Virus record (IMG/VR): IMGVR_UViG_3300046665_000548
Coordinates: 186,001-250,000 of that record
Strand: one strand, 5' to 3'
Length of the DNA: 64,000 bases
Part shown: in pieces, positions 14,082 to 51,900 of the stretch
Numbering within the stretch: position 1 is the first letter of the stretch
How the letters are laid out: each line of letters starts with the position of its first letter
Program-made: the position numbers and the translations under genes
Notes under the pieces: generated by a model
Told to the model about the DNA's origin: nothing
Database searches by the model: none
The model's input: the letters and a program-made list of their open reading frames with translations, nothing else

Positions 14082-14335
14082 CCGTTCACGAAACCTTTGT
14101 TGTTGGATATCTGAACCTGATCAGGCTTCACACCAGTAATGATGTGCAAATAATGCTTACCCTTCACCTTACAAAGAACGATTTGTCCAGTAATAAGAAC
14201 AGTAGTTCCTACAGGAACTACTGTGCAGAGTTCACCGCTCTTGATAAGAGGAACCATGGAATTGCCGCGCGGTCGAAAGCTAACTGTTTCTCCGGCGTTT
14301 AGCTTAGTGATGTGATGGGTTGCCCAGGTGCTCAT
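14030..14335 (-). CDS. Peptidase S24/S26-like protein
   Basis: SFRPRGNSMVPLIKSGE (catalytic Ser in GNSM); YLHII where the general base usually sits. Confidence 0.65.
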   Translation of the reverse strand: MSTWATHHITKLNAGETVSFRPRGNSMVPLIKSGELCTVVPVGTTVLITGQIVLCKVKGKHYLHIITGVKPDQVQISNNKGFVNGWTPLKNVFGVLTSVSK

Positions 14336-14577
14336 ATAAGCTCTTTAGCATCAAAACGACGGTAATTTCCAGTCGTGAATTGGTAGCGTGGTGCTGATTT
14401 AAATGAATAAATCGCATTTTGTTACGAAAAAATGAATTTCGATTAAATTTATCTGGTTGACCGGGGAACAAAACGCATTTAGTCGTTCGGAGGCCGGGAC
14501 CTAATCCCCTAAATCCTGACATGGCGGCTCATTAAGCCGAAAGGCGTCCATTCATTGCGGGGCAACAGGATTTTGTA

Positions 14578-16074
14578 ATGAGCCGATCAGCCCTGAGGGT
14601 ATTGCCCTCTCACAAACAATTTGTCCTGGCTCCTTCTTCACAAGCTCTCGGGACTAGCTTTTCGATTATGAAGACTCCGCATTCTAACCGCGCAGTGGAC
14701 CTCGCTAGCTCACAAGACGCCCCGTGGTTCGGTGATATCCTCGATGCTATCCCAGTCGCGGTCTGTAGGACCGACGCCAAGGGACGGCTAACCTATCTCA
14801 ACCAAGCTGCTGCTGATTTTGCCGGTATGGAGTCTAAATTAGGCGACACGCTTTGGAATGGTTTGCACAAAATTTACACCATGGCCGGTTTGCCTATTAC
14901 TCTTAAAAATTGCCCGATGGCAGTTTCTTTGAAGGAAGGAAGGGCGATACATGGGGCCGAAGCTCAATGCCAGCGCAAAGATGGCAGCCTGTTTCCTGTT
15001 CTCGTCTATTCAACGCCAATTTTCGACCGGCACGGGAAAGTTACTGGCGCGGTCCATATGCTTGTGGATGTCAGCGAACGTCATGCAACTTCCCGGTTTC
15101 TTACCCTTGCAGAGAAGCGTCTTCAGACAACGTATGATGTCGTGAGCGTTGGTATTGCCGAAACCGATGGGGCGGGACGTTTTTTGAACGCTAACCAGCG
15201 CGTCATAGACAACACCGGCCTTAGCCTAGATCAACTCAAAAACATGACGTTTTTCGATCTCTGTTCTCCCGAGGATCGCAACATCGAGCGTGAAAATTAC
15301 GAAAACCTGATCAAGGGCGACATCCTCAGCTACACTCTGGAAAGAAAGACCGCATTCACCCAAAATCTTTGGTTTCGGGTGACGACCAACGCGGTATGCG
15401 ATGACCACGGTCGGTTTATGTACGCGGTAAGGGTTTCGAGCGACATCACGAAACGCATGAAAGCAGAGGAAAAGCAGAGACTTCTGCTTAACGAATTGAA
15501 CCATCGTGTGAAAAACACTTTGGCGACGATTCAATCCATTGCGTTTCAGACCGCAAGAGCTACCACGGAACCAAAGGAATTCAAAAAAGCTTTCGAAGGA
15601 AGGCTTCTTGGCATCTCGCAAACTCACGATCTCCTCACGTCATCGGGATGGGAGGGGGCAACTCTGGCCGATGTGGTTCGAGCCGAGCTTATGCCATTTC
15701 ACGGCGAAGACACTCTGAGATGGGTCATGAGCGGGCCATCCGTAAATCTGGTTCCGGCATCGGTTGTTTCACTTGGTATGGTGATCCACGAACTAGCCAC
15801 CAACGCGATCAAATACGGCGCGCTGTCTGATGCGGACGGACAGGTGGACGTGACGTGGAATTTTACCAGAAAAGGACCAGAGGGGCGACGGCTGAAGCTT
15901 CGATGGATCGAGTTTGACGGCCCACCGGTCGTCAAGCCAACGCGCCAGGGCTTTGGTTCGAAGTTGTTTCGAAGCCTAGCTCGTCAACTTGATGCCAAGT
16001 TGGATGTCGAGTACGCACCGAGTGGAGTCCGTTGTTTGCTCGACATCCCGGTCGAGTCAATCACTGCGACCTAA
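14578..16074 (+). CDS. PAS-PAS-HWE histidine kinase (start may be downstream)
   Basis: ELNHRVKNTLA H-box, HELATNAIKYGALS N-box, RWIEFDGP (WxE) and GFGS G-box; two PAS/PAC domains. Confidence 0.92.
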   Translation: MSRSALRVLPSHKQFVLAPSSQALGTSFSIMKTPHSNRAVDLASSQDAPWFGDILDAIPVAVCRTDAKGRLTYLNQAAADFAGMESKLGDTLWNGLHKIYTMAGLPITLKNCPMAVSLKEGRAIHGAEAQCQRKDGSLFPVLVYSTPIFDRHGKVTGAVHMLVDVSERHATSRFLTLAEKRLQTTYDVVSVGIAETDGAGRFLNANQRVIDNTGLSLDQLKNMTFFDLCSPEDRNIERENYENLIKGDILSYTLERKTAFTQNLWFRVTTNAVCDDHGRFMYAVRVSSDITKRMKAEEKQRLLLNELNHRVKNTLATIQSIAFQTARATTEPKEFKKAFEGRLLGISQTHDLLTSSGWEGATLADVVRAELMPFHGEDTLRWVMSGPSVNLVPASVVSLGMVIHELATNAIKYGALSDADGQVDVTWNFTRKGPEGRRLKLRWIEFDGPPVVKPTRQGFGSKLFRSLARQLDAKLDVEYAPSGVRCLLDIPVESITAT

Positions 16075-20884: not shown

Positions 20885-22084
20885 TCAATACATGTTGAAG
20901 TTGGCGACTTTTAGTCCATCGCCGTCAATTCGTAAAGCCGCAGATGACAATCGGCCGCCTTTTCCGGAGCCCGTGTCGAGGAAGATCGTGTTACCGCCGT
21001 TGCTGTTGACGACCGTCATTGGCTTGGCTGTTGAACGAATGTCATGGCCAACGATGACAGTCATATCGGCAGGAACATTCTCCGTCCAAGTGTAACGACG
21101 TGCTGGGCGTTCTTCATTATAGTTCGCATCGAATTCTCCAAAGAGCGCCCAGGTTTCTAATTCTTTTGCAGTTGCCGATCCCGTCCAGAAACCTGGATGT
21201 ACCCCAGCGTGAGTGAAAAGAATGTTGCCGATCACTCGCCAATGACTTGACCTACTGACGAGACCTTTGAACCGCCCCTGCCAGCGCTTTCTGGCGGGCA
21301 ATCCCAATGATCCTAGGGCGTCCGTGGTGACCTTGTTGCCGTCGCTCAGTCGAACAGACGTGCGACCTCGCTCAATCTGATTGATCCATCTCATGATCTT
21401 TCGTTCATGATTACCAAGGATCATCTCACCCTGGCCGCGCATAACAACGCGATAGACCTCATCAGCGACTTCCAGCGTGTCGGAGCCGTAATCGATCACA
21501 TCACCCAGGAAGATCATGTAATGGTTTCGAGATCGAGCCCAGTCCAACGCGCTCAACAGAGATTGATACATCCCGTGAACGTCCCCAATGACGGTGATGC
21601 CATTCCAGTTCGCTTTGAGGCTTTCCAGATCGGGCTTTGTTTTGTCTACAAGCGACGGCTGATGAATTCTCCAGTCAATGACCTCGGCCAGTCCGTCGCC
21701 ACGAAGCAAGTCTTTTTCAGCCGCGTAGAAACGCTGCACGGATTGTTCGTCCGCTCCAGCAGGATCACAAAGGAAGTAGAAAACCGGAACACCAATATCG
21801 CTTCCCAATCGCGCGAGAGACATTCGGTCTTCCCGTCGAAGATTAGGAGCGTCAACAACAACGCGTTCGCCAAGATCAAGCTTCACCTGAATGCGGTGCC
21901 TGATCTCAGCGAAAACAATCGAATTGATTTCTGGTTTACTTTTCTCACCTACGAGATTGTAGGTCACATTGGCAGCACTAAGAATCTCGTAATCGGGGAA
22001 ATAACGAGCAAGTGTTTGCTCTCGATTTACTTGAGATGGACTTACCGCAATTACTAAAGAATGAGAAGGAACAACTTTTTGCAT
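20885..22084 (-). CDS. Polynucleotide kinase-phosphatase-like protein: degenerate AAA_33 kinase plus intact calcineurin-like phosphoesterase
   Basis: GDVHG, GDVIDYG, GNHE, THAG, VGHD and LDTG motifs; the P-loop reads VSPSQVNRE. Confidence 0.8.
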   Translation of the reverse strand: MQKVVPSHSLVIAVSPSQVNREQTLARYFPDYEILSAANVTYNLVGEKSKPEINSIVFAEIRHRIQVKLDLGERVVVDAPNLRREDRMSLARLGSDIGVPVFYFLCDPAGADEQSVQRFYAAEKDLLRGDGLAEVIDWRIHQPSLVDKTKPDLESLKANWNGITVIGDVHGMYQSLLSALDWARSRNHYMIFLGDVIDYGSDTLEVADEVYRVVMRGQGEMILGNHERKIMRWINQIERGRTSVRLSDGNKVTTDALGSLGLPARKRWQGRFKGLVSRSSHWRVIGNILFTHAGVHPGFWTGSATAKELETWALFGEFDANYNEERPARRYTWTENVPADMTVIVGHDIRSTAKPMTVVNSNGGNTIFLDTGSGKGGRLSSAALRIDGDGLKVANFNMY

Positions 22085-22313: not shown

Positions 22314-23708
22314 TCATTGCTTCTCCATAACCTCACTCATTGCTTGCATATCGAGCGCCGCAATCGGCGTATCGCCAGAGTACGCAAGCTTTGCGAATAG
22401 TGCGTCATTTGCCGTTGGAACGGCCATTGCTATGCAATAGTTGTCTTTGGCGCGGCGAACCTTGAAACTTACATTCGAGGCAATTTCCTCGAACGCTTTG
22501 ATGTCGTCCGGGCTGAGTTCGCTCTCGTAGCTAATCCGCCATTCTTTATCGATTTTCGCACGAACGACGACCATGCCTTGATATTTGTCGAGTTCGCCGC
22601 GTTTCTCGATATCGTTGAACAGTTTCCGAACCGGAGAGCCGAATTGAACGGTGAGCGCACGAAGTTTCCACGTTCGCTTGTACCATTCCTGGAGATCGAT
22701 GGTCTCAACCTCCTGCTTCGCGAGTTTGTCGAACTTAACCGCTTCCCAGGTTTCGGGTAGGTCCATTGCCTTCGAGTCGCCAGCCCAATCGGGCCGATCC
22801 GTGCCGGGCATGTCTTGATAATATCCGGACCAACCGAGGATTGACTGCTTCACTCGCGCCATATCATCAAAACGCTTGGCCTTCATGAACTTGTCCGTCA
22901 TGGTGAGCTTTACATCGGTACCGTTCCACTCAAGCCACGGCGTAGTTTCCATGAACAGCCCGGTCGAGCGGTCACGCAGAACGTATTGGAACGTGGTCGG
23001 AATATTGACGGCTTCCACAAACGGTCCGAGTTGGTTGAACGGTAGCAGGAAGTTATCCCCGTCAGCCTCGCAGGGCACACAGAGGCCGTCGTACAACATC
23101 CACACGTAACCGTTTCTCATCGCCGCGAGCGGATGAGTGGCGTTCCTAACGCCTGGAATCACGTTCCCACGACTGAACTTGCCGGTGACTTTGATCTCGG
23201 TCCCGGCCGCGAGCTTCACGTAAGGTTGGGCGATGTATTCGAACACCCCTTTGGCCTCAAGGGCAGCTTCGAGGTCCTTCAAAGAGCCCGAGACGCCAGC
23301 CTTTGACCGCTTAGCATCGTGAAACTTTCGATGGGCTTCGCTCCATCGATCATCGTTTTCGTTATACGTGAACGCGACATCTTCGGTAAGACGCCAGATC
23401 GAGCCCTTCACCATCTGCTGTTGCTTAGTGATTGCGCGCTCTTTTTTCGGAGCCGACGCCTTGGCGGGCTCTTCGGCAGGAGTGACGTAGCCGATCAGAG
23501 TCCGCTTTCCGGACCATTCAACGTAGCGAAGATCATTGCCTGGAACTGCGCCGAGACGAGGCAAGTACGCCGAGTGAAGATCATGAATGTATTTGACCTT
23601 CACGACCTGATCACGAGACGCTGGCTTAGGGTCGTCAAACCCATACCCATCGTAAACAGGAGTGCCCTTCGGTACGCGCACGTATCCGCCAACAACGATC
23701 TCCGACAT
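22314..23708 (-). CDS. Hypothetical protein (464 aa)
   Basis: Long ORF with AAAGGA RBS; no motif recognised. Confidence 0.7.
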   Translation of the reverse strand: MSEIVVGGYVRVPKGTPVYDGYGFDDPKPASRDQVVKVKYIHDLHSAYLPRLGAVPGNDLRYVEWSGKRTLIGYVTPAEEPAKASAPKKERAITKQQQMVKGSIWRLTEDVAFTYNENDDRWSEAHRKFHDAKRSKAGVSGSLKDLEAALEAKGVFEYIAQPYVKLAAGTEIKVTGKFSRGNVIPGVRNATHPLAAMRNGYVWMLYDGLCVPCEADGDNFLLPFNQLGPFVEAVNIPTTFQYVLRDRSTGLFMETTPWLEWNGTDVKLTMTDKFMKAKRFDDMARVKQSILGWSGYYQDMPGTDRPDWAGDSKAMDLPETWEAVKFDKLAKQEVETIDLQEWYKRTWKLRALTVQFGSPVRKLFNDIEKRGELDKYQGMVVVRAKIDKEWRISYESELSPDDIKAFEEIASNVSFKVRRAKDNYCIAMAVPTANDALFAKLAYSGDTPIAALDMQAMSEVMEKQ

Positions 23709-26065: not shown

Positions 26066-26953
26066 TCAAGCGTTGCGTTTCATCTGCTTGTATCGACGGT
26101 CGTAAAAATCGAGCTTCTGCTCGTCAAAATTGGCGTTGGACGCCCGCATCTTTCCGCCATCCAGGAATAGCTCTGTCGCCCGAGCACGGTCCATGAAGGT
26201 CGATGCTTTGTCATCGACCCTCGGCCCCCAACCGAGACGGAGCAGAAAATTCAGAATACCGTCCGGATCATAGCCACGATCACGGTAATCGAGCAGGCTA
26301 GCCGCGCCGTCGCGCTTTGCCATTTTCTTGTTGGCCTTGAAGATCAAACCAACGTGCGCAAATTTAGGAATGTCCAGCGGGTTATCCGAGGCGTGGTTCA
26401 GCGCGGAAAAGATCGCAACCTGCTTAGCGGTATTCGCGATATGGTCGGTGCCACGGATGATGAAATTCACCTCCAGGTCCCAATCATCAACGATAGACGC
26501 GAACTGATAGGTGGCCTGTCCTAGCTTATCGCCGCCGCGCACCAGACATAGCCGTCCGTCGATCTCCTCAACCGCTTTGTCGGAAACCTGAATGTCGCCA
26601 GCGATCTCATCGCGCCAAACACGAGGCATGAACGGCTGCCAAGACAGCATGATCGCCCCATTGTCGGCGGTCGTGGCAAAGCCAGCGTCAAGAAGACGCC
26701 TAGCATAGGCGCTGTAAATCGGACCGCGCTCAGACTGGCGCACGAAACGATCCCAGTCCAGCCCAAGCCATTTCAGACCGTCAAAGATCGGCTGCTCGAC
26801 CTCAACCATATTCCTGTCGGCATCGGTATCGTCCATTCGCAAAATGAACTGACCGCCCGAAGCCTTTGCGGCGAGCCAATTGAAATAAGCCGTACGGGCC
26901 GTCCCGATATGCATCATGCCGGTCGGTGATGGTGCAATGCGCGTCTTGTACAT
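26066..26953 (-). CDS. Truncated glutamyl-tRNA synthetase-like protein (catalytic core only)
   Basis: RIAPSPTG, HIGT (HIGH), LRMDDTD, IRGTDH, KMAKRDG (KMSKS-like). It ends at 295 aa with no anticodon-binding domains. Confidence 0.9.
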   Translation of the reverse strand: MYKTRIAPSPTGMMHIGTARTAYFNWLAAKASGGQFILRMDDTDADRNMVEVEQPIFDGLKWLGLDWDRFVRQSERGPIYSAYARRLLDAGFATTADNGAIMLSWQPFMPRVWRDEIAGDIQVSDKAVEEIDGRLCLVRGGDKLGQATYQFASIVDDWDLEVNFIIRGTDHIANTAKQVAIFSALNHASDNPLDIPKFAHVGLIFKANKKMAKRDGAASLLDYRDRGYDPDGILNFLLRLGWGPRVDDKASTFMDRARATELFLDGGKMRASNANFDEQKLDFYDRRYKQMKRNA

Positions 26954-43486: not shown

Positions 43487-43653
43487 GTTTGACAGAAAGG
43501 TAGAGCGCCATGGCTATCAGTAAAACTGAAGAGAAATTGAAAGAATTTCAACAGGCATTGAAAGACACTGGTGTAATCGCCCCTTGGCGAGCAGAATCCA
43601 TAGCTAACTTGCTCAAAGAATACGTCGATTTGAGACTGCAAGAGGAAAAGTGA

Positions 43654-44022
43654 ATGTCCGTTCGTTCAGCAACCGGTCACGACAAAATCATTGGGCAGAA
43701 GATCAGAGCCCGCCGTCTCATCGAAAAGATGTCCCAGGAGACGTTGGGAGAAAAGATCGGCGTATCCTTTCAGCAAGTGCAGAAATATGAGAAGGGCACG
43801 AATCGCGTCAGCTACTCCAGGCTGGTGCAGATTGCAGACACGTTAAACGAAGGCGTTTCGTTCTTCACCGAGGATACCAGCACGGTCAGTGAAGAAGGCC
43901 GCGCGATCCAGGAGGCAATGGCCCAGCCTGACGTTCAAAAAATTGCGCTCAGTGTTATGAGGATGACGCCTGTGATGAGAAAGGCGATCCTCGACTTCGT
44001 GAAGACACTCGAAGCCAGTTGA
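43654..44022 (+). CDS. XRE-family HTH regulator (alphaproteobacterial type)
   Basis: MSQETLGEKIGVSFQQVQKYEKGTNRVS. Confidence 0.92.
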   Translation: MSVRSATGHDKIIGQKIRARRLIEKMSQETLGEKIGVSFQQVQKYEKGTNRVSYSRLVQIADTLNEGVSFFTEDTSTVSEEGRAIQEAMAQPDVQKIALSVMRMTPVMRKAILDFVKTLEAS

Positions 44023-44376
44023 GGAGTGTGCGGTGAAAGAAGCCGACGAAATAACGCTGTTGCGTGAAGCGTTGAAGAATATGCTCGGACGAATTGAGAT
44101 CATGAAATTGAACTCGCCATTCGGCGGTGATCCTCAATCCGAAGACGAACGTATTGCGCTTTGCTTGTCGGAGAACCGTTTTCCTTACCCGCCTTACGGA
44201 GAACTCAAGAAATTTGAGTTAGAAGATTTCCGGCAGGCGTATGCGGAATTTGAAAAAAGGGGACGCACGTGAACCGGATAGCAAAGCTGTTTTTGATCTA
44301 TTTCGGAATTGCGGTCATATCAGCAGTGACGTTCTTGATCGGCTACGAAATCCACGTAATTCTTCATCTCTGATAG

Positions 44377-44591
44377 TGGTGGAGGCGACGGGATTCGAAC
44401 CCGCGACGCAGCCAGCACCCAAGCATTACCAAGGGCTGAAATTGGGTTTAGAACAGCGTTTCGCCGTATACCATTCACCATAGCACACGGCTGTATCGAA
44501 ACGTCCCCGCTTCCATTTAACTAGCTGCCAGTTTTACCTGGACCGGCATCCTGTTCTCCGGTGCTCTGCCGAGCGCTGAGCATTCGCCCCC
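44377..44591 (-). ncRNA. ssrA: Compact one-piece tmRNA (215 nt)
   Basis: GGGGGCG/CGCCTCC-ACCA acceptor with G3:U70, T arm GCGGG-TTCGAAT-CCCGT, helix 2 AGCACC/GGTGCT, PK1-like ATGCCGG..GTAAAACTGGCA, and an H5-like hairpin at 44463-44491 with TGA in the loop. Confidence 0.8.
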
Positions 44592-44612
44592 TAAGGGTTT
44601 ATTTGCGTATTC

Positions 44613-44687
44613 TGGAGGTTGAGGTGGGGATCGAACCCACTCGTGGAGGTTTTGCAGACCTCAGCGTTCCCATTTCGCCACTCAACC
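44613..44687 (-). tRNA. tRNA-Cys(GCA)
   Basis: GGTTGAG/CTCAACC, GAGGT-CTGCAAA-ACCTC, U73, CCA. Confidence 0.95.
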
Positions 44688-44688
44688 G

Positions 44689-44764
44689 TCAACGCGACAG
44701 GATTCGAACCTGTGATCCCCAGTCTCCCGAACTGGTAGGGACGGCCAGACTCCCCTACGCGCTG
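44689..44764 (-). tRNA. Atypical tRNA-Pro(GGG) (C33, A37, G38; no encoded CCA)
   Basis: CAGCGCG/CGCGTTG, A73, CCAGT-TCGGGAG-ACTGG, ACAGG-TTCGAAT-CCTGT. Confidence 0.75.
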
Positions 44765-44772
44765 TAACTCAA

Positions 44773-44979
44773 TTAGTCTAGCTTGAACCGCTCTGCGACA
44801 GGCAGACGGCGATAGCGCTCGATAACTCCGCTATAGAATTTGATAGCTTCGAGCGCGATCTCTCTGACTTCAACTAGGCTGTCGGCTTCGACGCAAAAGT
44901 AAGGCGAACTACTCGACATAGCCACCCAACGGCCCGGTTCGTATTCTCTGACGGTGACCGTCACGATGTTATCCGTCAT
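44773..44979 (-). CDS. HicB-like antitoxin-fold small protein inside the tRNA array
   Basis: VTVREYEPGRWVAMS...FCVEADSLVEVREIALEAIKFY resembles the HicB N-terminal domain; GAAGGGG RBS. Confidence 0.5.
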   Translation of the reverse strand: MTDNIVTVTVREYEPGRWVAMSSSSPYFCVEADSLVEVREIALEAIKFYSGVIERYRRLPVAERFKLD

Positions 44980-45000
44980 GACGGTCCCCTTCAAAACCTA

Positions 45001-45077
45001 TGGAGTCGGCGGCAGGACTTGAACCTGCATACTCCGGGTTTGCAACCCGGCTGACTAGCCATTCTCAACACGCCGAC
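45001..45077 (-). tRNA. tRNA-Cys(GCA), second copy
   Basis: GTCGGCG/CGCCGAC, CCGGG-TTGCAAA-CCCGG, U73, CCA. Confidence 0.92.
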
Positions 45078-45078
45078 G

Positions 45079-45153
45079 TGGTGACGGAACCTGGGATCGA
45101 ACCAGGGACATGCGCCGTATGAAAGCGCCGCTCTACCGCTGAGCTATACCGCC
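45079..45153 (-). tRNA. tRNA-Met(CAT), elongator-type (Ile2 not excluded)
   Basis: GGCGGTA/TTCCGTC, GCGCT-TTCATAC-GGCGC, ACCA. Confidence 0.88.
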
Positions 45154-45160
45154 GAAAGCA

Positions 45161-45246
45161 TTGTTCGTGACCCACCGGACTACTCAAAGGACCGGGAGGC
45201 TGTCCTTGTCCATATGAGAGTTTGCCTCCCGATGGGTCTCGAACAA
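45161..45246 (-). ncRNA. Unassigned structured element within the tRNA array
   Basis: Nested stems TTGTTCG/CGAACAA, GACCCA/TGGGTC and CGGGAGGC/GCCTCCCG. Confidence 0.35.
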
Positions 45247-45261
45247 CGCTCTATTAACTTG

Positions 45262-45338
45262 TGGTCAGGGTGGCAGGCTACGACCCTGCGATTTCCTCTT
45301 CCCGAAAGAGGCGGATTACCAGACTTTCCCACACCCTG
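45262..45338 (-). tRNA. tRNA-Pro(CGG) with non-canonical T loop (GTCGTAG)
   Basis: CAGGGTG/CACCCTG, CCTCT-TTCGGGA-AGAGG, ACCA. Confidence 0.9.
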
Positions 45339-45352
45339 TAACTCTGTATGCT

Positions 45353-45438
45353 TGGTGCGGCCAAGAGGACTCGAACCTCCACTCTTTTTGGGAACTACCA
45401 CCTCAAGGTAGCGCGTCTACCAGTTCCGCCATGGCCGC
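45353..45438 (-). tRNA. tRNA-Leu(GAG)
   Basis: GCGGCCA/TGGCCGC, CTACC-TTGAGGT-GGTAG, long variable arm, ACCA. Confidence 0.95.
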
Positions 45439-45462
45439 ATTCGTGGTGTTAGATGTGCTCTG

Positions 45463-45537
45463 TCAGGCGTCTCGGATTCGAACCGAGGATACTCCTGTAC
45501 CCAAAACAGGCGGATTACCAGACTTTCCCAACGCCTG
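45463..45537 (-). tRNA. tRNA-Pro(TGG) embedded in a 16-bp acceptor-stem extension
   Basis: CAGGCGT/ACGCCTG, CCTGT-TTTGGGT-ACAGG; no CCA at the normal position; flanks pair (45448-45463 with 45538-45553). Confidence 0.9.
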
Positions 45538-45590
45538 ACAGAACACATCTAACGCACGCGACTAGAGTAATCTCTTGCTCCAGTCAGTAT

Positions 45591-45678
45591 TGGTGGGCGG
45601 AGTAGGACTCGAACCTACGTAGGTTTTGAAGCCGGGAGGTTTACAGCCTCCGCCGATTGCCGCTCCGGTCACCCGCCC
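45591..45678 (-). tRNA. tRNA-Tyr(GTA)
   Basis: GGGCGGG/TCCGCCC, GGAGG-CTGTAAA-CCTCC, long variable arm, ACCA. Confidence 0.95.
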
Positions 45679-45740
45679 ATGGAAGACGATCTCCGACTGT
45701 CCGCAGACAGTTCATCAATCGTCATCACTAAACTTTAGAC

Positions 45741-45776
45741 AAAGAAAAACCCCGGTCAGATTTCTCTGCCGGGGCT
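45741..45776 (-). terminator. Attenuator terminator upstream of the tRNA array
   Basis: AGCCCCGG-CAGA-GAAA-TCTG-A-CCGGGGT followed by TTTTCTTT. Confidence 0.9.
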
Positions 45777-45800
45777 CTTCTGCTTTCGGGTTCTGCTCGC

Positions 45801-45887
45801 TTACACCACCAAGATGCGCGCGACCAGCCCGAGGGCAGAAAGCCCCCTGGTGGGATAGCACGGCATTGGGTAAAGAGCGTTGAACAT
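45801..45887 (-). CDS. Attenuator leader peptide MFNALYPMPCYPTRGLSALGLVARILVV (not in ORF track)
   Basis: GAGGAAG RBS; codons 5-12 match the downstream tRNAs; codons 14-20 can pair with the terminator 5' arm. Confidence 0.8.
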   Translation of the reverse strand: MFNALYPMPCYPTRGLSALGLVARILVV

Positions 45888-45931
45888 CGAATTCTTCCTC
45901 TGACGCGTCCGGTTGGACCGTCTGACAGTTT

Positions 45932-45939
45932 TATTTATA
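45932..45939 (-). promoter_or_regulatory. T4-type late promoter TATAAATA driving the leader and tRNA array
   Basis: Exact T4 late consensus 45 nt upstream of the leader ATG. Confidence 0.75.
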
Positions 45940-45969
45940 TAACCAGACTGATTCGAGTGTCAACAACTT

Positions 45970-46245
45970 TTATTGGGAAAGTCGTTGGATATCTTTTTCA
46001 AGACCAGCCATGACATTTGCAAGCCGTTCACGATGCTTTTCCAGTATGGCGAGCATGCCCGTTTCGGACTTTGGCTTGCGCCGAGCAGCGCGACCCTCCT
46101 CGGACATCGGCTTCTTGACCTTCTTCAAGATACGCTGTCCGCTCGCGTCTTTCTCTTTTGACTTGTAATACCGGTCTCCAGTCTCCGGGTCCTGGTAATA
46201 GCCTTTGTACTGGCCAGTCATGATTTCAAGCATTGTCTTGTGCAT
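45970..46245 (-). CDS. Basic hypothetical protein
   Basis: 91-aa ORF with GGAGGG RBS. Confidence 0.6.
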   Translation of the reverse strand: MHKTMLEIMTGQYKGYYQDPETGDRYYKSKEKDASGQRILKKVKKPMSEEGRAARRKPKSETGMLAILEKHRERLANVMAGLEKDIQRLSQ

Positions 46246-46376
46246 CGGATTTACCCTCCAAAAAGTAACTTACCTTCGCATGGGGTAAAATTGCCGTCAA
46301 TGGCTTTGTTGTATTGAAAATTATGGTATTTTAGTTCGCGTAAACGCGGTATGACAGGGCAAAGGAAAGGCCATAT

Positions 46377-47873
46377 ATGTCCATTGATGATCTTTTGAAG
46401 CACTTCGAGATTTCGTATCCCACGTCCGAAGCAACGCTGCAAAGCGTATCCCCGATATGGGGCGGGGCGATTACCAGCGTCGAAGAGACGAACATGGAAC
46501 AGTTCGTCACCATCATGGAAGATGCCCAGACCGCGTACGAGCAGTGGCGGAACGTCCCGGCTCCTCGTCGGGGCGAACTGATCCGTATCTTTGGAAATCT
46601 CCTTCGAGAGAACAAAGAACAGCTTGGAATGCTCGTCACCGTCGAGAGCGGCAAGATCGTCTCGGAAGGTCTCGGTGAGGTTCAGGAAATGATCGACATC
46701 TGCGATTTCGCGGTTGGTCTCTCGCGGCAGCTATATGGGCTGACCATCGCGACCGAGCGCCGCGACCATCGCATGATGGAGACGTGGCACCCAATGGGCG
46801 TGGTCGGGATCATCTCGGCCTTCAATTTCCCGGTCGCTGTATGGGCCTGGAACGCCGCCCTGGCGCTTGTTTGCGGAAACGCGTGTGTATGGAAGCCTTC
46901 CGAGAAGACCCCTCTCACGGCCCTCGCTACGCAGCGATTATTCCTTCAGGCGTGTGAGCAGTTCGGATCGGATGCTCCGGTTGGCCTATCCGGGCTGATC
47001 ATTGGTGATCATGCAATCGGTAAGCATCTCGTGACGCATCGTCATACGAAAGTCATTTCAGCAACCGGTTCGACTCGGATGGGTAGGCAGGTTGCTGCGG
47101 CAGCGTCGGGTGATTTCAAACGCACCATTCTGGAGCTTGGCGGCAACAACGCGGCGATTGTCTCGATGGCCGCCGATCTTGATCTTGCCATTCGTGGTAT
47201 CGCGTTTGCTGCCATGGGAACGGCTGGACAGCGCTGCACGACGCTTCGTAGGCTCTTTGTGGATGTGACCGTCTATACGCCGTTCCTAGAGCGCTTGAAG
47301 GCAGCCTATTCGAGCGTGAAGATTGGCGACCCTCGCGAGCCCGACACGCTCATTGGCCCGCTGATCGACAGGAATGCCTTCGGAATGATGCAGATGGCTC
47401 TGGAGCAAGCTCGCAGCGAAGGCGGGACCGTTCATGGTGGCGAAGAAGTGGAGGTTACCGGCCGCGCTGGTATCTACGTCAGACCGGCTCTGGTTGAGAT
47501 GCCGGGACAAACTCCCATCATGCTTCGGGAGACCTTCGCGCCTATTCTGTACGTCACCGCGTATAGGTATTTGGAAGATGCCATTCAGATGAATAACGCG
47601 GCCGAACACGGCTTGTCGTCTTCGATCTTCACGAATGACTTGCGTGAGGCCGAACTGTTTCTATCCGCTGCCGGTTCGGATTGCGGCATCGCCAACGTCA
47701 ACATCGGTCCATCTGGCGCAGAGATCGGCGGCGCATTCGGCGGTGAGAAGGATACCGGAGGAGGTCGCGAGTCTGGTTCTGATGCGTGGAAGGCGTACAT
47801 GCGTCGCGCCACGAACACTATCAACTATGGCAGTGATCTCCCGCTAGCCCAGGGCGTCAAGTTCACAGTATAG
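46377..47873 (+). CDS. Aldehyde dehydrogenase family 7 (alpha-aminoadipic semialdehyde/P6C dehydrogenase-like)
   Basis: ISAFNFPVAVW, LELGGNN, GTAGQRCT, ETFAPI, GAEIGGAFGGEKDTGGGRESGSD. Confidence 0.92.
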   Translation: MSIDDLLKHFEISYPTSEATLQSVSPIWGGAITSVEETNMEQFVTIMEDAQTAYEQWRNVPAPRRGELIRIFGNLLRENKEQLGMLVTVESGKIVSEGLGEVQEMIDICDFAVGLSRQLYGLTIATERRDHRMMETWHPMGVVGIISAFNFPVAVWAWNAALALVCGNACVWKPSEKTPLTALATQRLFLQACEQFGSDAPVGLSGLIIGDHAIGKHLVTHRHTKVISATGSTRMGRQVAAAASGDFKRTILELGGNNAAIVSMAADLDLAIRGIAFAAMGTAGQRCTTLRRLFVDVTVYTPFLERLKAAYSSVKIGDPREPDTLIGPLIDRNAFGMMQMALEQARSEGGTVHGGEEVEVTGRAGIYVRPALVEMPGQTPIMLRETFAPILYVTAYRYLEDAIQMNNAAEHGLSSSIFTNDLREAELFLSAAGSDCGIANVNIGPSGAEIGGAFGGEKDTGGGRESGSDAWKAYMRRATNTINYGSDLPLAQGVKFTV

Positions 47874-47882
47874 TATAGTAAC

Positions 47883-47966
47883 GCGGGCGTGCCGGAACCG
47901 GTAGACGGAAGGGACTTAAAATCCCTCGCCTCGTGCGTGCGGGTTCGAGTCCCGCCGCCCGCACCA
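47883..47966 (+). tRNA. tRNA-Leu(TAA), canonical class II
   Basis: GCGGGCG/CGCCCGC, AGGGA-CTTAAAA-TCCCT, variable arm, ACCA. Confidence 0.95.
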
Positions 47967-47976
47967 CTAGGTAGGA

Positions 47977-48591
47977 ATGATCATGCGTGATTTCGATGAG
48001 ATAGCGGAAGGTGTTTACGTTAGACGCGAATACACGCCAGAGCAGATCAAGAAGCTCACCACGCGGCCGAACAAAATGATCAATGATGCGATTGAGAAAT
48101 CTCGCGAGCGCATGAAAGAGGACATGGGACGGTTTGGAAAGAATGGTTTGAAGAAACGGAGCGCATGGCAGTTCGAACAGCCTGCGTCTCGCACCGTTCC
48201 GCTTCGATATATCCCGGACAAATTGGCTTGGGCATATGCGGAAGCAGAGCTTCCGTTTATTCTTTTCATCGATGCTGAAAAATGCTCCTCCCCTGAGATG
48301 TTTGACTGGTGTGCGGAACAGTTCGGTGAACCGTTGCTAAGCGAGCAGCGACCAGTCGATTATCGATCCAGGAGACGTGACAGAGATTATCTTCAAGGCA
48401 AGATTGCCACGACGGATCAAACACGCAATTGCAGGAGAATGTACCGGACCGCTGATGGTGGTGGTCAATGGCTCGGTTGGATATCACTCAATCCGGCAGT
48501 AACGTCAGCGTTCATACTACCTCAGCGCGGCACTTACTGGTTTTTCCGAACAGAGACACAGCGTATTGCTTTTAAGTTGCGTTGGTATTAA
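47977..48591 (+). CDS. W..FKLxW paralog family protein
   Basis: EMFDWCAEQFG...WFFRTETQRIAFKLRWY. Confidence 0.65.
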   Translation: MIMRDFDEIAEGVYVRREYTPEQIKKLTTRPNKMINDAIEKSRERMKEDMGRFGKNGLKKRSAWQFEQPASRTVPLRYIPDKLAWAYAEAELPFILFIDAEKCSSPEMFDWCAEQFGEPLLSEQRPVDYRSRRRDRDYLQGKIATTDQTRNCRRMYRTADGGGQWLGWISLNPAVTSAFILPQRGTYWFFRTETQRIAFKLRWY

Positions 48592-50752: not shown

Positions 50753-51368
50753 TCACGCCCCCATAGCAAGCATTAGTCGATCCACGCCGACCGCCCATCC
50801 TACACCTTCCTGGTAAGTTCCGCCACCAGCAACTTGCTTTTGAGCGCCTAAACTTTCCACGGCGGCTTCGAAACCGTCCTCGACATAGTAGGATAGACCT
50901 CGTTTTACCGAATCGCTCCAAGTATAGGCCATGCCAAGCTTATCCAAGCAAAGTCGCAAAAGTTGTTTTGCTTGATCTGATTCGGCCGAACCAAGCATCT
51001 CGATGCCGAACTGGGTGAATTCGCGGTAGCGGCCCTTCTGGGGGCGCTCGTAGCGGTAGCAGCGCTGCACATAGAAGACGTTGCGGGTCTTCATGCGCTT
51101 GGACCAATCGTCCCGCCACGTCTCCTGAACGAGCCCGGTAACTTCAGGAATCAGGCACACGTTGCGTTCGCCCTTATCCTGGAAACGCCACATCATCTGG
51201 GAATTCTCGGCCCCGACTTTTTCATCAAAGGTGGCGCTCTCCCAAATGCTTGGGACAATAATTTCCTCGAATTCAGCGTCGATGAAGACACTCCCGAAGA
51301 GTATTGACAACCTTATTGTAGAGCCGGGCCTCGTCGCCGGACAAAATTCGTGTTCCTCTTAACATCAT
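50753..51368 (-). CDS. Minimal histidyl-tRNA synthetase-like catalytic core, interrupted by a +1 frameshift near 51299-51293
   Basis: Frame 1: MMLRGTRILSGDEARLYNKVVNTLR (stop at 51273). Frame 2: VFIDAEFEEIIVP (motif 1), YRYERPQKGRYREFTQ (motif 2), RGLSYY, GGG.Y, GWAVGVDRL (motif 3). No insertion or anticodon domain. Confidence 0.8.
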
Positions 51369-51824: not shown

Positions 51825-51900
51825 TGGTACCAGTTGGGAGAATCGAACTCACCGTATTCCGATCCACAGTCGGACGCTACTACCATTGAGCTAAACTGGC
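51825..51900 (-). tRNA. tRNA-His(GTG), alphaproteobacterial type (no G-1, G1:U72, A73)
   Basis: GCCAGTT/AACTGGT-A-CCA; TCCGA-CTGTGGA-TCGGA; T at position -1. Confidence 0.92.

What the first reader, a model, noticed from the sequence alone, without database searches (positions are those of the whole stretch)
45444..45553. tRNA-Pro(UGG) with a 23-bp acceptor helix ending in a displaced ACCA
Seen: the 16 nt 5' of the tRNA (GTTAGATGTGTTCTGT) pair fully, with one G:U, to the 16 nt 3' of position 72 (ACAGAGCACATCTAAC). These are followed by ACCA, while the normal CCA position is not encoded. No other tRNA here has this. Inference: a latched precursor that delays RNase P/RNase Z processing, an elongated tRNA-like decoy carrying its own NCCA end, or a substrate for the anticodon-blind synthetases.
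Basis: partly seen in the sequence, partly recalled or inferred. Interest (0 to 1): 0.6.

Follow-up and report, generated by a model that had tools for sequence, protein, structure and literature searches.

The report
Phage proline tRNA with clamped ends
A normal-looking proline tRNA gene in a 608-kb phage has 16 bases on each side that pair and lengthen its end helix; its closest relative lacks this, so it is most likely a recent copying accident.

Summary
On the minus strand, tRNA-Pro(UGG) (45537-45463) is flanked by two 16-nt arms (45553-45538 and 45463-45448). They pair with one G:U and run straight on from the acceptor stem, giving a 23-bp helix. CCA is missing at positions 74-76, and ACCA follows the helix (45447-45444).

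This is far beyond chance. None of 133,600 shuffled leader/trailer pairs reached 11 bp, and 16 bp is the longest of about 1,200 tRNAs examined.

It is not conserved. The closest relative found (L014, neighbouring proteins 83-84% identical) has the same tRNA order but an ordinary tRNA-Pro(UGG) with ACCA at 73-76 and no extension. A second relative (L020) has the L014-type leader.

Best reading: a young inverted duplication of the leader, made by template switching primed on the acceptor-stem hairpin, which pushed the gene's own A73-CCA 16 nt downstream. The transcript would be clamped, so RNase P and 3' trimming should be hindered. Release would need a double-strand cut such as RNase III, then CCA re-addition.

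No result supports the decoy or synthetase-substrate ideas. Three other phage tRNAs carry 11-13 bp clamps, all without CCA at 74-76 and none followed by NCCA.

The parts
45538..45553 (-). 5' arm of the extension (leader positions -16 to -1), GTTAGATGTGTTCTGT
   Evidence: (I1). It is unique in the window apart from its partner arm.
45464..45537 (-). tRNA-Pro(UGG) body, positions 1-72: acceptor CAGGCGT/ACGCCTG, anticodon loop UUUGGGU, canonical T loop
   Evidence: ARAGORN; Rfam tRNA 53.5 bits. It is 73% identical to the L014 orthologue.
45448..45463 (-). 3' arm of the extension, ACAGAGCACATCTAAC. Its first A sits at the discriminator position. It is probably an inverted copy of the leader inserted after G72.
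   Evidence: It has no counterpart in L014.
45444..45447 (-). ACCA directly after the 23-bp helix; most likely the gene's original A73-CCA76, displaced 16 nt
   Evidence: Sequence. Five of the other 11 tRNAs in the window end in ACCAC, like this one. The other clamped tRNAs found lack NCCA after the clamp.
45439..45443 (-). CGAAT spacer, the 5' leader of the next tRNA (CTAAT in L014)
45353..45438 (-). tRNA-Leu(GAG) with encoded CCA. RNase P cleavage at its 5' end would define the 3' end of the clamped precursor.
   Evidence: 90% identical to the L014 orthologue
45591..45678 (-). tRNA-Tyr(GUA) with encoded CCA, the first gene of the cluster; the 53-nt spacer to tRNA-Pro(UGG) includes the 5' arm
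44377..45678 (-). The whole co-oriented RNA cluster: Tyr, Pro(UGG), Leu(GAG), Pro(CGG), long hairpin RNA, Met, Cys, small ORF, Pro(GGG), Cys, tmRNA-like RNA. The tRNA order is the same in L014.

Best explanation
This is a genuine tRNA-Pro(UGG) gene in the tRNA operon of a 608-kb phage, probably of a Caulobacterales-like alphaproteobacterium. Its 3' flank recently gained a 16-nt inverted copy of its own 5' leader. The likely event is a replication template switch. The nascent strand's acceptor 3' half snapped back onto the acceptor 5' half, the polymerase copied the leader for 16 nt, and synthesis then resumed on the proper template. That places a reverse complement of the leader exactly after G72, keeps the new helix in perfect register with the acceptor stem, and pushes the original A73-CCA 16 nt downstream, where ACCA is now seen. 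Because leader position -1 is T, the first inserted base is A, so the discriminator identity is kept. In the transcript, the 16-bp leader:trailer duplex stacks on the acceptor stem to give 23 bp. This clamps both ends: RNase P cannot reach the +1 site without unwinding, and 3' exonucleases stop at the duplex. Mature tRNA can then arise only if a double-strand-specific endonuclease (RNase III, present in nearly all bacteria) or a helicase-assisted pathway opens the clamp, followed by RNase P, 3' trimming to A73 and CCA addition. Shown: the anatomy, its non-random nature, its absence from the nearest relative, and the intact tRNA body. Inferred: the template-switch origin, the processing block and the RNase III route.
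For: 1) The structure is real and not chance.
2) It is lineage-specific. L014 is syntenic: its AAA ATPase is 84% and its aldehyde dehydrogenase 83% identical, and it has the same eight tRNAs in the same order. There, tRNA-Pro(UGG) ends in ACCA at 73-76 and has no extension, only a 5-bp TGTGT/ACACA pairing beyond CCA. L020, a third relative with aldehyde dehydrogenase 84% identical, has the L014-type leader and D arm.
3) The arms are young. There is one transition in 32 nt of arm, whereas the same spacers are only about 45-50% identical between the window and L014.
4) The arms occur nowhere else in the window, so they are not a dispersed repeat.
5) The helix abuts the acceptor stem with no unpaired base, and ACCA follows directly, as snap-back priming predicts. 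ACCAC is the commonest tRNA 3' end plus trailer in this genome (5 of the other 11 tRNAs).
6) Template switching is a documented way to make perfect stems in one event (PMC8794818).
7) The tRNA body is intact: 53.5 bits, U33, G37, C1:G72.
8) Extended leader:trailer pairing inhibits RNase P (PMC9433436; PMC8457004). RNase III is the enzyme that cuts leader:trailer stems around rRNAs (PMC6582327, abstract).
Against: Only one complete relative, plus the 5' half of a second, could be examined, so the polarity (gain here versus loss elsewhere) rests on few genomes. The tRNA body itself differs greatly from the L014 orthologue (73% identity, with a D arm like the window's own Pro(CGG)). The whole gene with its flanks may therefore have been imported or converted rather than mutated in place. 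The distance from position 73 to tRNA-Leu is 24 nt in both genomes. That fits a same-length replacement of the trailer as well as an insertion, and under replacement the ACCA would be coincidence (about 1 in 64). Similar clamps of 11-13 bp recur in three unrelated phage tRNA arrays, which could mean selection rather than accident. No expression or processing data exist.
Confidence: 0.55

Rival explanations
1. Adaptive processing stem. The leader:trailer duplex is selected as an rRNA-like RNase III site, or as a timing latch, that controls when or how much tRNA-Pro(UGG) is released from the polycistronic transcript.
For: 23 bp of continuous duplex meets the size of a bacterial RNase III substrate (established knowledge; PMC6582327 abstract). 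The one mismatch is a G:U on the tRNA-sense strand. Clamps of 11-13 bp recur in three unrelated phage tRNA arrays, always on tRNAs without CCA at 74-76. None of at least 9 bp was seen in 303 cellular tRNAs. The same operon holds another long-stem RNA that is conserved with compensatory changes.
Against: It is absent from the nearest relative, which has a canonical gene at the same position. There is no covariation to test. Frequency is very low: 1 in 668 in a random phage sample. A single G:U is as likely on either strand. No RNase III gene was seen among the window ORFs scanned, although only 64 of 608 kb was available.
Confidence: 0.2
2. Imported cassette. The whole tRNA-Pro(UGG) gene with its inverted-repeat flanks replaced the ancestral gene by recombination with another phage, so the clamp arose elsewhere.
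For: The body is only 73% identical to the L014 orthologue, while the flanking Tyr and Leu are 93% and 90% identical. The D arm is of the GGGAAAGTCTGGTAATCC type seen in many unrelated phage tRNA-Pro genes and in the window's own Pro(CGG).
Against: No donor was found. The 3' half of the tRNA matches only this contig in IMG/VR. None of the other loci sharing the D-arm 22-mer carries the extension on its tRNA-Pro. Pro(CGG) and Met are just as diverged (72%, 65%) without any clamp. The leader still shares CTCTA..GTC..TGTGT with the relatives' leaders.
Confidence: 0.12
3. Functional elongated tRNA-like RNA. RNase P and 3' exonucleases treat the 23-bp helix plus ACCA as a hairpin substrate and produce a stable RNA of about 110 nt that acts as a decoy or is used by the phage's truncated synthetase-like proteins.
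For: ACCA sits exactly at the end of the helix and is mostly unpaired in the predicted fold. Bacterial RNase P is known to cleave hairpin substrates carrying 3' RCCA (established knowledge, not tested here). The window encodes GluRS-core-only and HisRS-core-fragment ORFs.
Against: It is not conserved in L014. The three other clamped tRNAs have no NCCA after the clamp. The body keeps every feature of a working tRNA-Pro rather than a degenerate mimic. The helix end (G:C, then ACCA) is not a HisRS-type G-1:C73 end. The ACCA is explained by displacement of the original 3' end.
Confidence: 0.05
4. DNA-level element or artefact: an invertible segment, a miniature transposon with terminal inverted repeats, a protein-binding palindrome, or an assembly error.
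For: A 23-bp inverted repeat with a 60-bp spacer is formally an inverton-like or cruciform-capable site.
Against: The repeat is in exact register with the acceptor stem, which a DNA-level site has no reason to respect. The arms occur nowhere else in the window. No target-site duplication is visible. The feature lies in the interior of a 607,744-bp contig, whose two independently fetched pieces are identical to the window.
Confidence: 0.03

Closest known systems
Leader:trailer extensions of the acceptor stem in pre-tRNAs and tRNA-like precursors (yeast and human pre-tRNAs; MALAT1-mascRNA; E. coli leader:RCCA pairing)
   Same: The 5' leader pairs with the 3' trailer and prolongs the acceptor helix, and the pairing modulates RNase P (PMC8457004, PMC9433436).
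   Different: The known cases are short (2 to about 10 bp) and usually have a bulge or mismatch at -1/+1 that RNase P needs. Here there are 16 contiguous pairs with no bulge, the discriminator position is paired, the normal CCA is displaced, and the setting is a phage of bacteria.
RNase III processing stems flanking 16S and 23S rRNA
   Same: A long duplex formed by the sequences on either side of a stable RNA within a polycistronic transcript (PMC6582327, abstract).
   Different: rRNA stems are conserved and covary, whereas this one is absent from the nearest relative. It encloses a 75-nt tRNA and stacks directly on its own terminal helix. No cleavage has been mapped.
Template-switch (quasi-palindrome) mutations that create or perfect hairpins
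   Same: Near-perfect reverse-complement arms appear next to an existing inverted repeat in a single lineage (PMC8794818).
   Different: That work described rRNA and microRNA stems. An acceptor-stem-primed event in a tRNA gene that displaces the CCA was not found in the literature searches made here.
CCA-less phage tRNA genes (phage T4 tRNA-Pro and tRNA-Ser; recalled from established knowledge, not tested here)
   Same: A phage tRNA in a polycistronic cluster lacks encoded CCA at 74-76 and so depends on 3' trimming and the CCA-adding enzyme. The window's Pro(GGG)-Cys pair, with no spacer, is the closer analogue.
   Different: T4 precursors have no long leader:trailer duplex.
Archaeal bulge-helix-bulge leader:trailer helices (split or permuted tRNAs, rRNA)
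   Same: Leader and trailer pair around a stable RNA.
   Different: There are no 3-nt bulges, the helix is continuous, and the context is a bacterial-type phage. This is not a member.

Membership tests
Bacterial-type tRNA-Pro(UGG) gene | Cloverleaf scoring above the tRNA covariance-model threshold | tested here: met
   Rfam RF00005 53.5 bits against a gathering score of 29; ARAGORN tRNA-Pro(tgg)
Bacterial-type tRNA-Pro(UGG) gene | Anticodon UGG in a 7-nt loop with U33 and G37; C1:G72 and A at the discriminator position (bacterial ProRS identity elements, from established knowledge) | tested here: met
   Read directly from the sequence: loop UUUGGGU, C1...G72, then A
Bacterial-type tRNA-Pro(UGG) gene | Production of a mature, chargeable tRNA of about 76 nt | not testable with these tools
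   Needs RNA data or in vitro processing and aminoacylation
RNase III processing stem | About 20 bp or more of continuous duplex formed by leader and trailer | tested here: met
   16 + 7 = 23 bp
RNase III processing stem | Conservation or covariation of the stem among relatives | tested here: not met
   Absent in L014; the L020 leader is of the L014 type
RNase III processing stem | Staggered double-strand cleavage mapped in the stem | not testable with these tools
   Experimental
Template-switch-generated inverted repeat | Near-perfect reverse-complement arms next to a pre-existing inverted repeat, absent from sister lineages | tested here: met
   15 Watson-Crick pairs + 1 G:U abutting the acceptor stem; absent in L014 and in the 5' side of L020
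Template-switch-generated inverted repeat | Ancestral sequence that identifies source and target and fixes the switch points | tested here: inconclusive
   The flanks of L014 are only about 45-50% identical to the window's. Both insertion (which explains the ACCA) and same-length replacement (24 nt in both genomes) fit.
tRNA-like decoy or tRNA-like 3' structure with its own NCCA | Single-stranded NCCA at the end of the terminal helix | tested here: inconclusive
   ACCA is present and mostly unpaired in the MFE fold. It is absent after the clamp in the three analogous cases, and the chance of NCCA at that spot is about 1 in 64.
tRNA-like decoy or tRNA-like 3' structure with its own NCCA | Conservation as an elongated species in relatives | tested here: not met
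   L014 has a canonical gene
Archaeal bulge-helix-bulge splice/processing motif | Two 3-nt bulges separated by a 4-bp helix | tested here: not met
   Continuous helix, no bulges
Mobile element or inverton bounded by terminal inverted repeats | Further copies of the arms, a target-site duplication, or both orientations | tested here: not met
   The arms are unique in the window at up to 3 mismatches. No direct repeat flanks them. Orientation variants could not be tested.

The most novel reading that the evidence does not exclude
Clamped tRNA genes without CCA at 74-76 may be a rare but recurrent and selected class in phage tRNA arrays (16 bp here; 13, 13 and 11 bp in three unrelated arrays). 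In this class, release of the tRNA would be gated by a double-strand RNA cut. In this particular case, the host's own RNase P and 3' exonucleases might also trim the precursor to a discrete, stable tRNA-like RNA of about 110 nt with a 23-bp terminal helix and a genuine ACCA end.
Probability: 0.12. Interest if true: 0.65.

Novelty: new variant of a known kind. Interest (0 to 1): 0.3.

Why it matters
If the main reading is right, this is a clean natural example of how one replication slip on the acceptor-stem hairpin can remodel a tRNA gene. It clamps both ends of the precursor and moves the CCA. It is also a ready-made substrate for asking how far bacterial RNase P, RNase III, 3' exonucleases and the CCA-adding enzyme can rescue such a precursor. 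It warns annotators that a high-scoring tRNA call says nothing about whether the precursor can be matured. If the clamps turn out to be selected, they would be a new way for phages to gate the supply of one tRNA. On present evidence it is a lineage-specific oddity, not a new system.

Tried and rejected
1) Relatives by DNA pattern. The D-arm 22-mer in IMG/VR found the source contig plus two unrelated phages. In JGI metagenomes it found eight unrelated tRNA arrays. A tRNA-Tyr 23-mer found one unrelated AT-rich phage. The 3' half of the tRNA found only the source contig. None carries the same extension.
2) Relatives by protein. IMG/VR holds no relative of the AAA ATPase. Of the relatives found in the large protein collection, only L014 and L020 were useful. 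L015 ends before the cluster. L016, L017, L143 and L144/L145 are not syntenic for the tRNAs. The small ORFs around the cluster have no homologue in the relatives, so they could not serve as anchors.
3) Relatives of the other clamped tRNAs, to look for covariation. None were found in IMG/VR or GenBank phages.
4) Rfam at E<=1 over 43500-48500 gave nothing but tRNAs and a sub-threshold tmRNA hit; no Y-RNA-like or other family covers the site.
5) GenBank phages have only weak similarity to this region, limited to the tmRNA-like RNA and single tRNAs of Brevundimonas jumbo phages and T4-like phages. Twenty tRNAs of the Brevundimonas phage Kabachok show no extension.
6) The promoter/terminator scan found nothing relevant; the helix is not followed by a T run.
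7) Rejected readings: bulge-helix-bulge motif (no bulges), dispersed repeat or operator (arms unique), and the short ORFs starting MCSVRR on both strands (by-products of the inverted repeat).
8) Protein structure and complex prediction were not used, because no claim here rests on them.

Full report
WHAT IS THERE

The finding lies on the minus strand, inside a co-oriented cluster of eight tRNA genes: Tyr, Pro(UGG), Leu(GAG), Pro(CGG), Met, Cys, Pro(GGG), Cys. The cluster also holds a long hairpin RNA, a small ORF and a tmRNA-like RNA.

ARAGORN calls tRNA-Pro(tgg) at 45462-45537, and Rfam's tRNA model scores 53.5 bits against a threshold of 29. Read 5'->3', the parts are:
- a 16-nt leader arm (45553-45538);
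- the tRNA, with acceptor CAGGCGT/ACGCCTG;
- a 16-nt trailer arm (45463-45448), whose first A occupies the discriminator position;
- ACCA (45447-45444);
- CGAAT;
- tRNA-Leu.

All 16 arm positions pair, 15 as Watson-Crick pairs and one as G:U at -6:78. They run on from the acceptor stem without any bulge, giving 23 bp. Positions 74-76 read CAG. The one qualifier is that tRNA-Pro(GGG) also lacks CCA, because it abuts tRNA-Cys with no spacer.

IS IT MORE THAN CHANCE?

I measured how far leader and trailer continue the acceptor helix in every tRNA I could fetch.
- The other 11 tRNAs of the window: at most 1 contiguous extra pair.
- 668 tRNAs from 106 randomly hit IMG/VR loci: at most 3 contiguous pairs.
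- 303 tRNAs from 108 bacterial and archaeal genome loci: at most 3 contiguous pairs, and at most 8 with one mismatch allowed.
- 133,600 shuffled leader/trailer pairings: a maximum of 10.

Sixteen pairs is therefore not chance. The arms occur nowhere else in the window, even with three mismatches allowed.

CONTEXT

The window is part of IMG/VR contig IMGVR_UViG_3300046665_000548, which is 607,744 bp long. Two independently fetched pieces of that contig are identical to the window. Gene content fits a very large phage of an alphaproteobacterium:
- a tail-fibre chaperone domain, ArdC, ThyX and an HWE histidine kinase;
- an aldehyde dehydrogenase whose named cellular homologues, 65-70% identical, include Caulobacter, Asticcacaulis and Phenylobacterium;
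- weak DNA similarity to Brevundimonas jumbo phages.

RELATIVES

The AAA ATPase 2 kb away has an 84% identical homologue on a 203,940-bp JGI contig (L014). L014 is syntenic and carries the same eight tRNAs in the same order.

At the orthologous position, L014 has a canonical tRNA-Pro(UGG): acceptor CGGAGCG/CGTTCCG, ACCA at 73-76, and no extension. The only leader:trailer pairing is a 5-bp TGTGT/ACACA helix beyond the CCA.

A third relative (L020, aldehyde dehydrogenase 84% identical) has a contig that begins inside tRNA-Pro(UGG). Its leader and D arm are of the L014 type, not the window type. The clamp is therefore confined to the window's lineage.

By contrast, the 22-bp-stem hairpin RNA between Pro(CGG) and Met is conserved in L014. 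It shows two compensatory pair changes and a paired insertion. Selected structures in this operon are thus visible at this evolutionary distance.

ORIGIN

The arms differ by one transition in 32 nt, while the same spacers are only about 45-50% identical between the window and L014. The repeat is therefore much younger than the split of the two phages.

Template switching during replication is a documented way to create perfect stems in one step (PMC8794818). A tRNA gene offers a ready primer. The 3' acceptor strand can snap back on the 5' acceptor strand, and the polymerase then copies the leader. That model makes three predictions, all of which match the sequence:
- the inverted copy begins exactly after G72;
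- it is in perfect register with the acceptor stem;
- the original A73-CCA reappears right after the copy.

ACCAC, the motif found here, is also the commonest tRNA 3' end plus trailer in this genome (5 of the other 11 tRNAs). Because leader position -1 is T, the first inserted base is A, so the discriminator identity is kept.

Two caveats apply.
- The distance from position 73 to tRNA-Leu is 24 nt in both genomes. That equally fits a same-length overwrite of the trailer, in which case the ACCA would be coincidence (about 1 in 64).
- The tRNA body is only 73% identical to the L014 orthologue, and its D arm resembles the window's own Pro(CGG). Conversion or import of the gene together with its flanks cannot be excluded. 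However, Pro(CGG) at 72% and Met at 65% are as diverged without any clamp, and no donor was found.

CONSEQUENCE

The leader:trailer duplex alone is predicted at about -32 kcal/mol. Bacterial RNase P loses efficiency with as few as two leader:RCCA pairs and must unwind them (PMC9433436). Continuous coaxial extensions without a -1 bulge impair RNase P (PMC8457004).

RNase P cleavage at tRNA-Leu would leave a 9-nt tail (ACCACGAAU) beyond the duplex, and exonucleases would stop near the helix. The most likely route to a mature tRNA has four steps:
- a double-strand cut, by RNase III (the enzyme that cuts leader:trailer stems around rRNAs; PMC6582327);
- 5' cleavage by RNase P;
- 3' trimming;
- CCA addition.

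All of this is inference, because no RNA data exist. The intact body suggests that the gene has not decayed, but it may simply be too young to show decay.

An elongated RNA with a real ACCA end is conceivable, because bacterial RNase P does cleave hairpins with 3' RCCA (established knowledge, not tested here). Three points count against a selected function:
- the feature is not conserved in L014;
- the body is a complete tRNA rather than a mimic;
- none of the three analogous clamps is followed by NCCA.

The 'anticodon-blind synthetases' are a GluRS catalytic-domain-only ORF (26066-26953) and a HisRS core fragment (50753-51310). No result links them to this RNA, and the helix end is not a HisRS-type G-1:C73 end.

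RECURRENCE

While looking for relatives I found three other clamped tRNAs in unrelated phage arrays:
- L009 tRNA-Asn, 13 perfect pairs;
- L007 tRNA-Tyr, 13 pairs with one mismatch;
- L093 tRNA-Asn, 11 pairs after a -1:73 mismatch.

All lack CCA at 74-76, although most of their neighbours encode it. None of at least 9 bp was seen in 303 cellular tRNAs. In the random phage sample the rate was 1 in 668. I could find no relatives of these three to test for covariation. This recurrence keeps open a modest possibility that such clamps are selected, but it is equally what a recurrent hairpin-primed mutation would give.

VERDICT

The feature is a lineage-specific clamp on an otherwise ordinary phage tRNA-Pro(UGG) gene. 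It is best explained as a recent inverted duplication of the leader that displaced the gene's own CCA. The 'latched precursor' reading is mechanically plausible but not shown to be a selected function. The decoy and synthetase readings are unsupported. It is an extreme variant of known leader:trailer pairing, of moderate-to-low interest unless a large census shows that such clamps are maintained.

Noticed in passing
window 45157-45250 (minus strand); L014 about 14840-14935: An RNA hairpin of about 94 nt with a 22-bp outer stem lies between tRNA-Pro(CGG) and tRNA-Met, ending 3 nt before tRNA-Met. It is conserved in L014 with two compensatory pair changes (A-U to G-C, U-A to C-G) and a paired C/G insertion. 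No Rfam family matches it. It is probably a stable small RNA of the tRNA operon.
   Followed up: partly
window 44377-44591 (minus strand); L014 about 14240-14450: A tmRNA-like RNA closes the cluster. It runs from 5' GGGGCGA to a tRNA-like 3' end with TCGCCTCCACCA. Rfam tmRNA scores 31.9 bits, below the gathering score of 47, at E = 3e-10. ARAGORN does not call it. It is conserved in L014 and about 73% identical to an unannotated stretch of Brevundimonas jumbo phages. No convincing tag reading frame was worked out.
   Followed up: partly
window 44688-44764 / 44613-44687 (minus strand); L014 14584-14660 / 14509-14583: tRNA-Pro(GGG) lacks CCA and abuts tRNA-Cys with no spacer, which implies a dimeric precursor. 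The arrangement is conserved in L014.
   Followed up: partly
window 44765-45000 (minus strand), ORF 44773-44979: A 236-nt stretch with a 68-aa ORF (no Pfam hit) and an 18-nt imperfect hairpin sits between tRNA-Cys and tRNA-Pro(GGG). L014 has only 13 nt there, and the ORF has no homologue in the relatives.
   Followed up: partly
window 45682-45722 (minus strand); L014 15459-15500; L020 about 275-316: A 41-nt element upstream of tRNA-Tyr is almost identical in all three phages. It contains the dyad ACTGT-N6-ACAGT and may be a promoter or operator of the tRNA operon. It lies 3 nt from tRNA-Tyr in the window and about 60 nt from it in the relatives. No sigma-70-like promoter was detected.
   Followed up: no
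L009 2517-2599 (+); L007 5730-5811 (-); L093 332-407 (-): Three other phage tRNAs (Asn, Tyr, Asn) lack CCA at 74-76 and have leader:trailer duplexes of 13, 13 (one mismatch) and 11 bp continuing the acceptor stem. None is followed by NCCA. No relatives were found to test conservation.
   Followed up: partly
L006 6223-6296 (identical in L010 1334-1407): tRNA-Pro(UGG) sits in an array where no tRNA encodes CCA at 74-76. Its leader (CTCTCCCCTCTC) and trailer (GAGAGGAGAG) pair at a distance, across a small trailer hairpin. This is a looser form of leader:trailer pairing.
   Followed up: no
window 26066-26953 (-), 50753-51310 (-), tRNA-His 51825-51900; L020 7028-7471: There are two truncated synthetase-like ORFs: a GluRS catalytic domain only (295 aa, like the GluQ-RS architecture) and a HisRS core fragment (185 aa). 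The HisRS fragment lies near tRNA-His and is conserved as a short ORF (147 aa) beside two tRNA-His genes in L020.
   Followed up: partly
window 20885-22084 (-) and 22314-23708 (-): An ORF with a P-loop kinase (AAA_33) and a calcineurin-like phosphoesterase domain, an architecture reminiscent of polynucleotide kinase-phosphatase RNA-repair enzymes. Next to it is a 464-aa ORF with no Pfam hit.
   Followed up: no
window 45417-45548 (-) and 45453-45605 (+): Two short ORFs on opposite strands both begin MCSVRR. This is a by-product of the inverted repeat, not a pair of genes.
   Followed up: yes
L016 9027-9409: A more distant relative (AAA ATPase 72% identical) carries a permuted, two-piece tmRNA just upstream of the ATPase gene. 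ARAGORN reads the tag as VNDNVAPSAVRLAA. It has no tRNA cluster within 10 kb of the ATPase gene.
   Followed up: no
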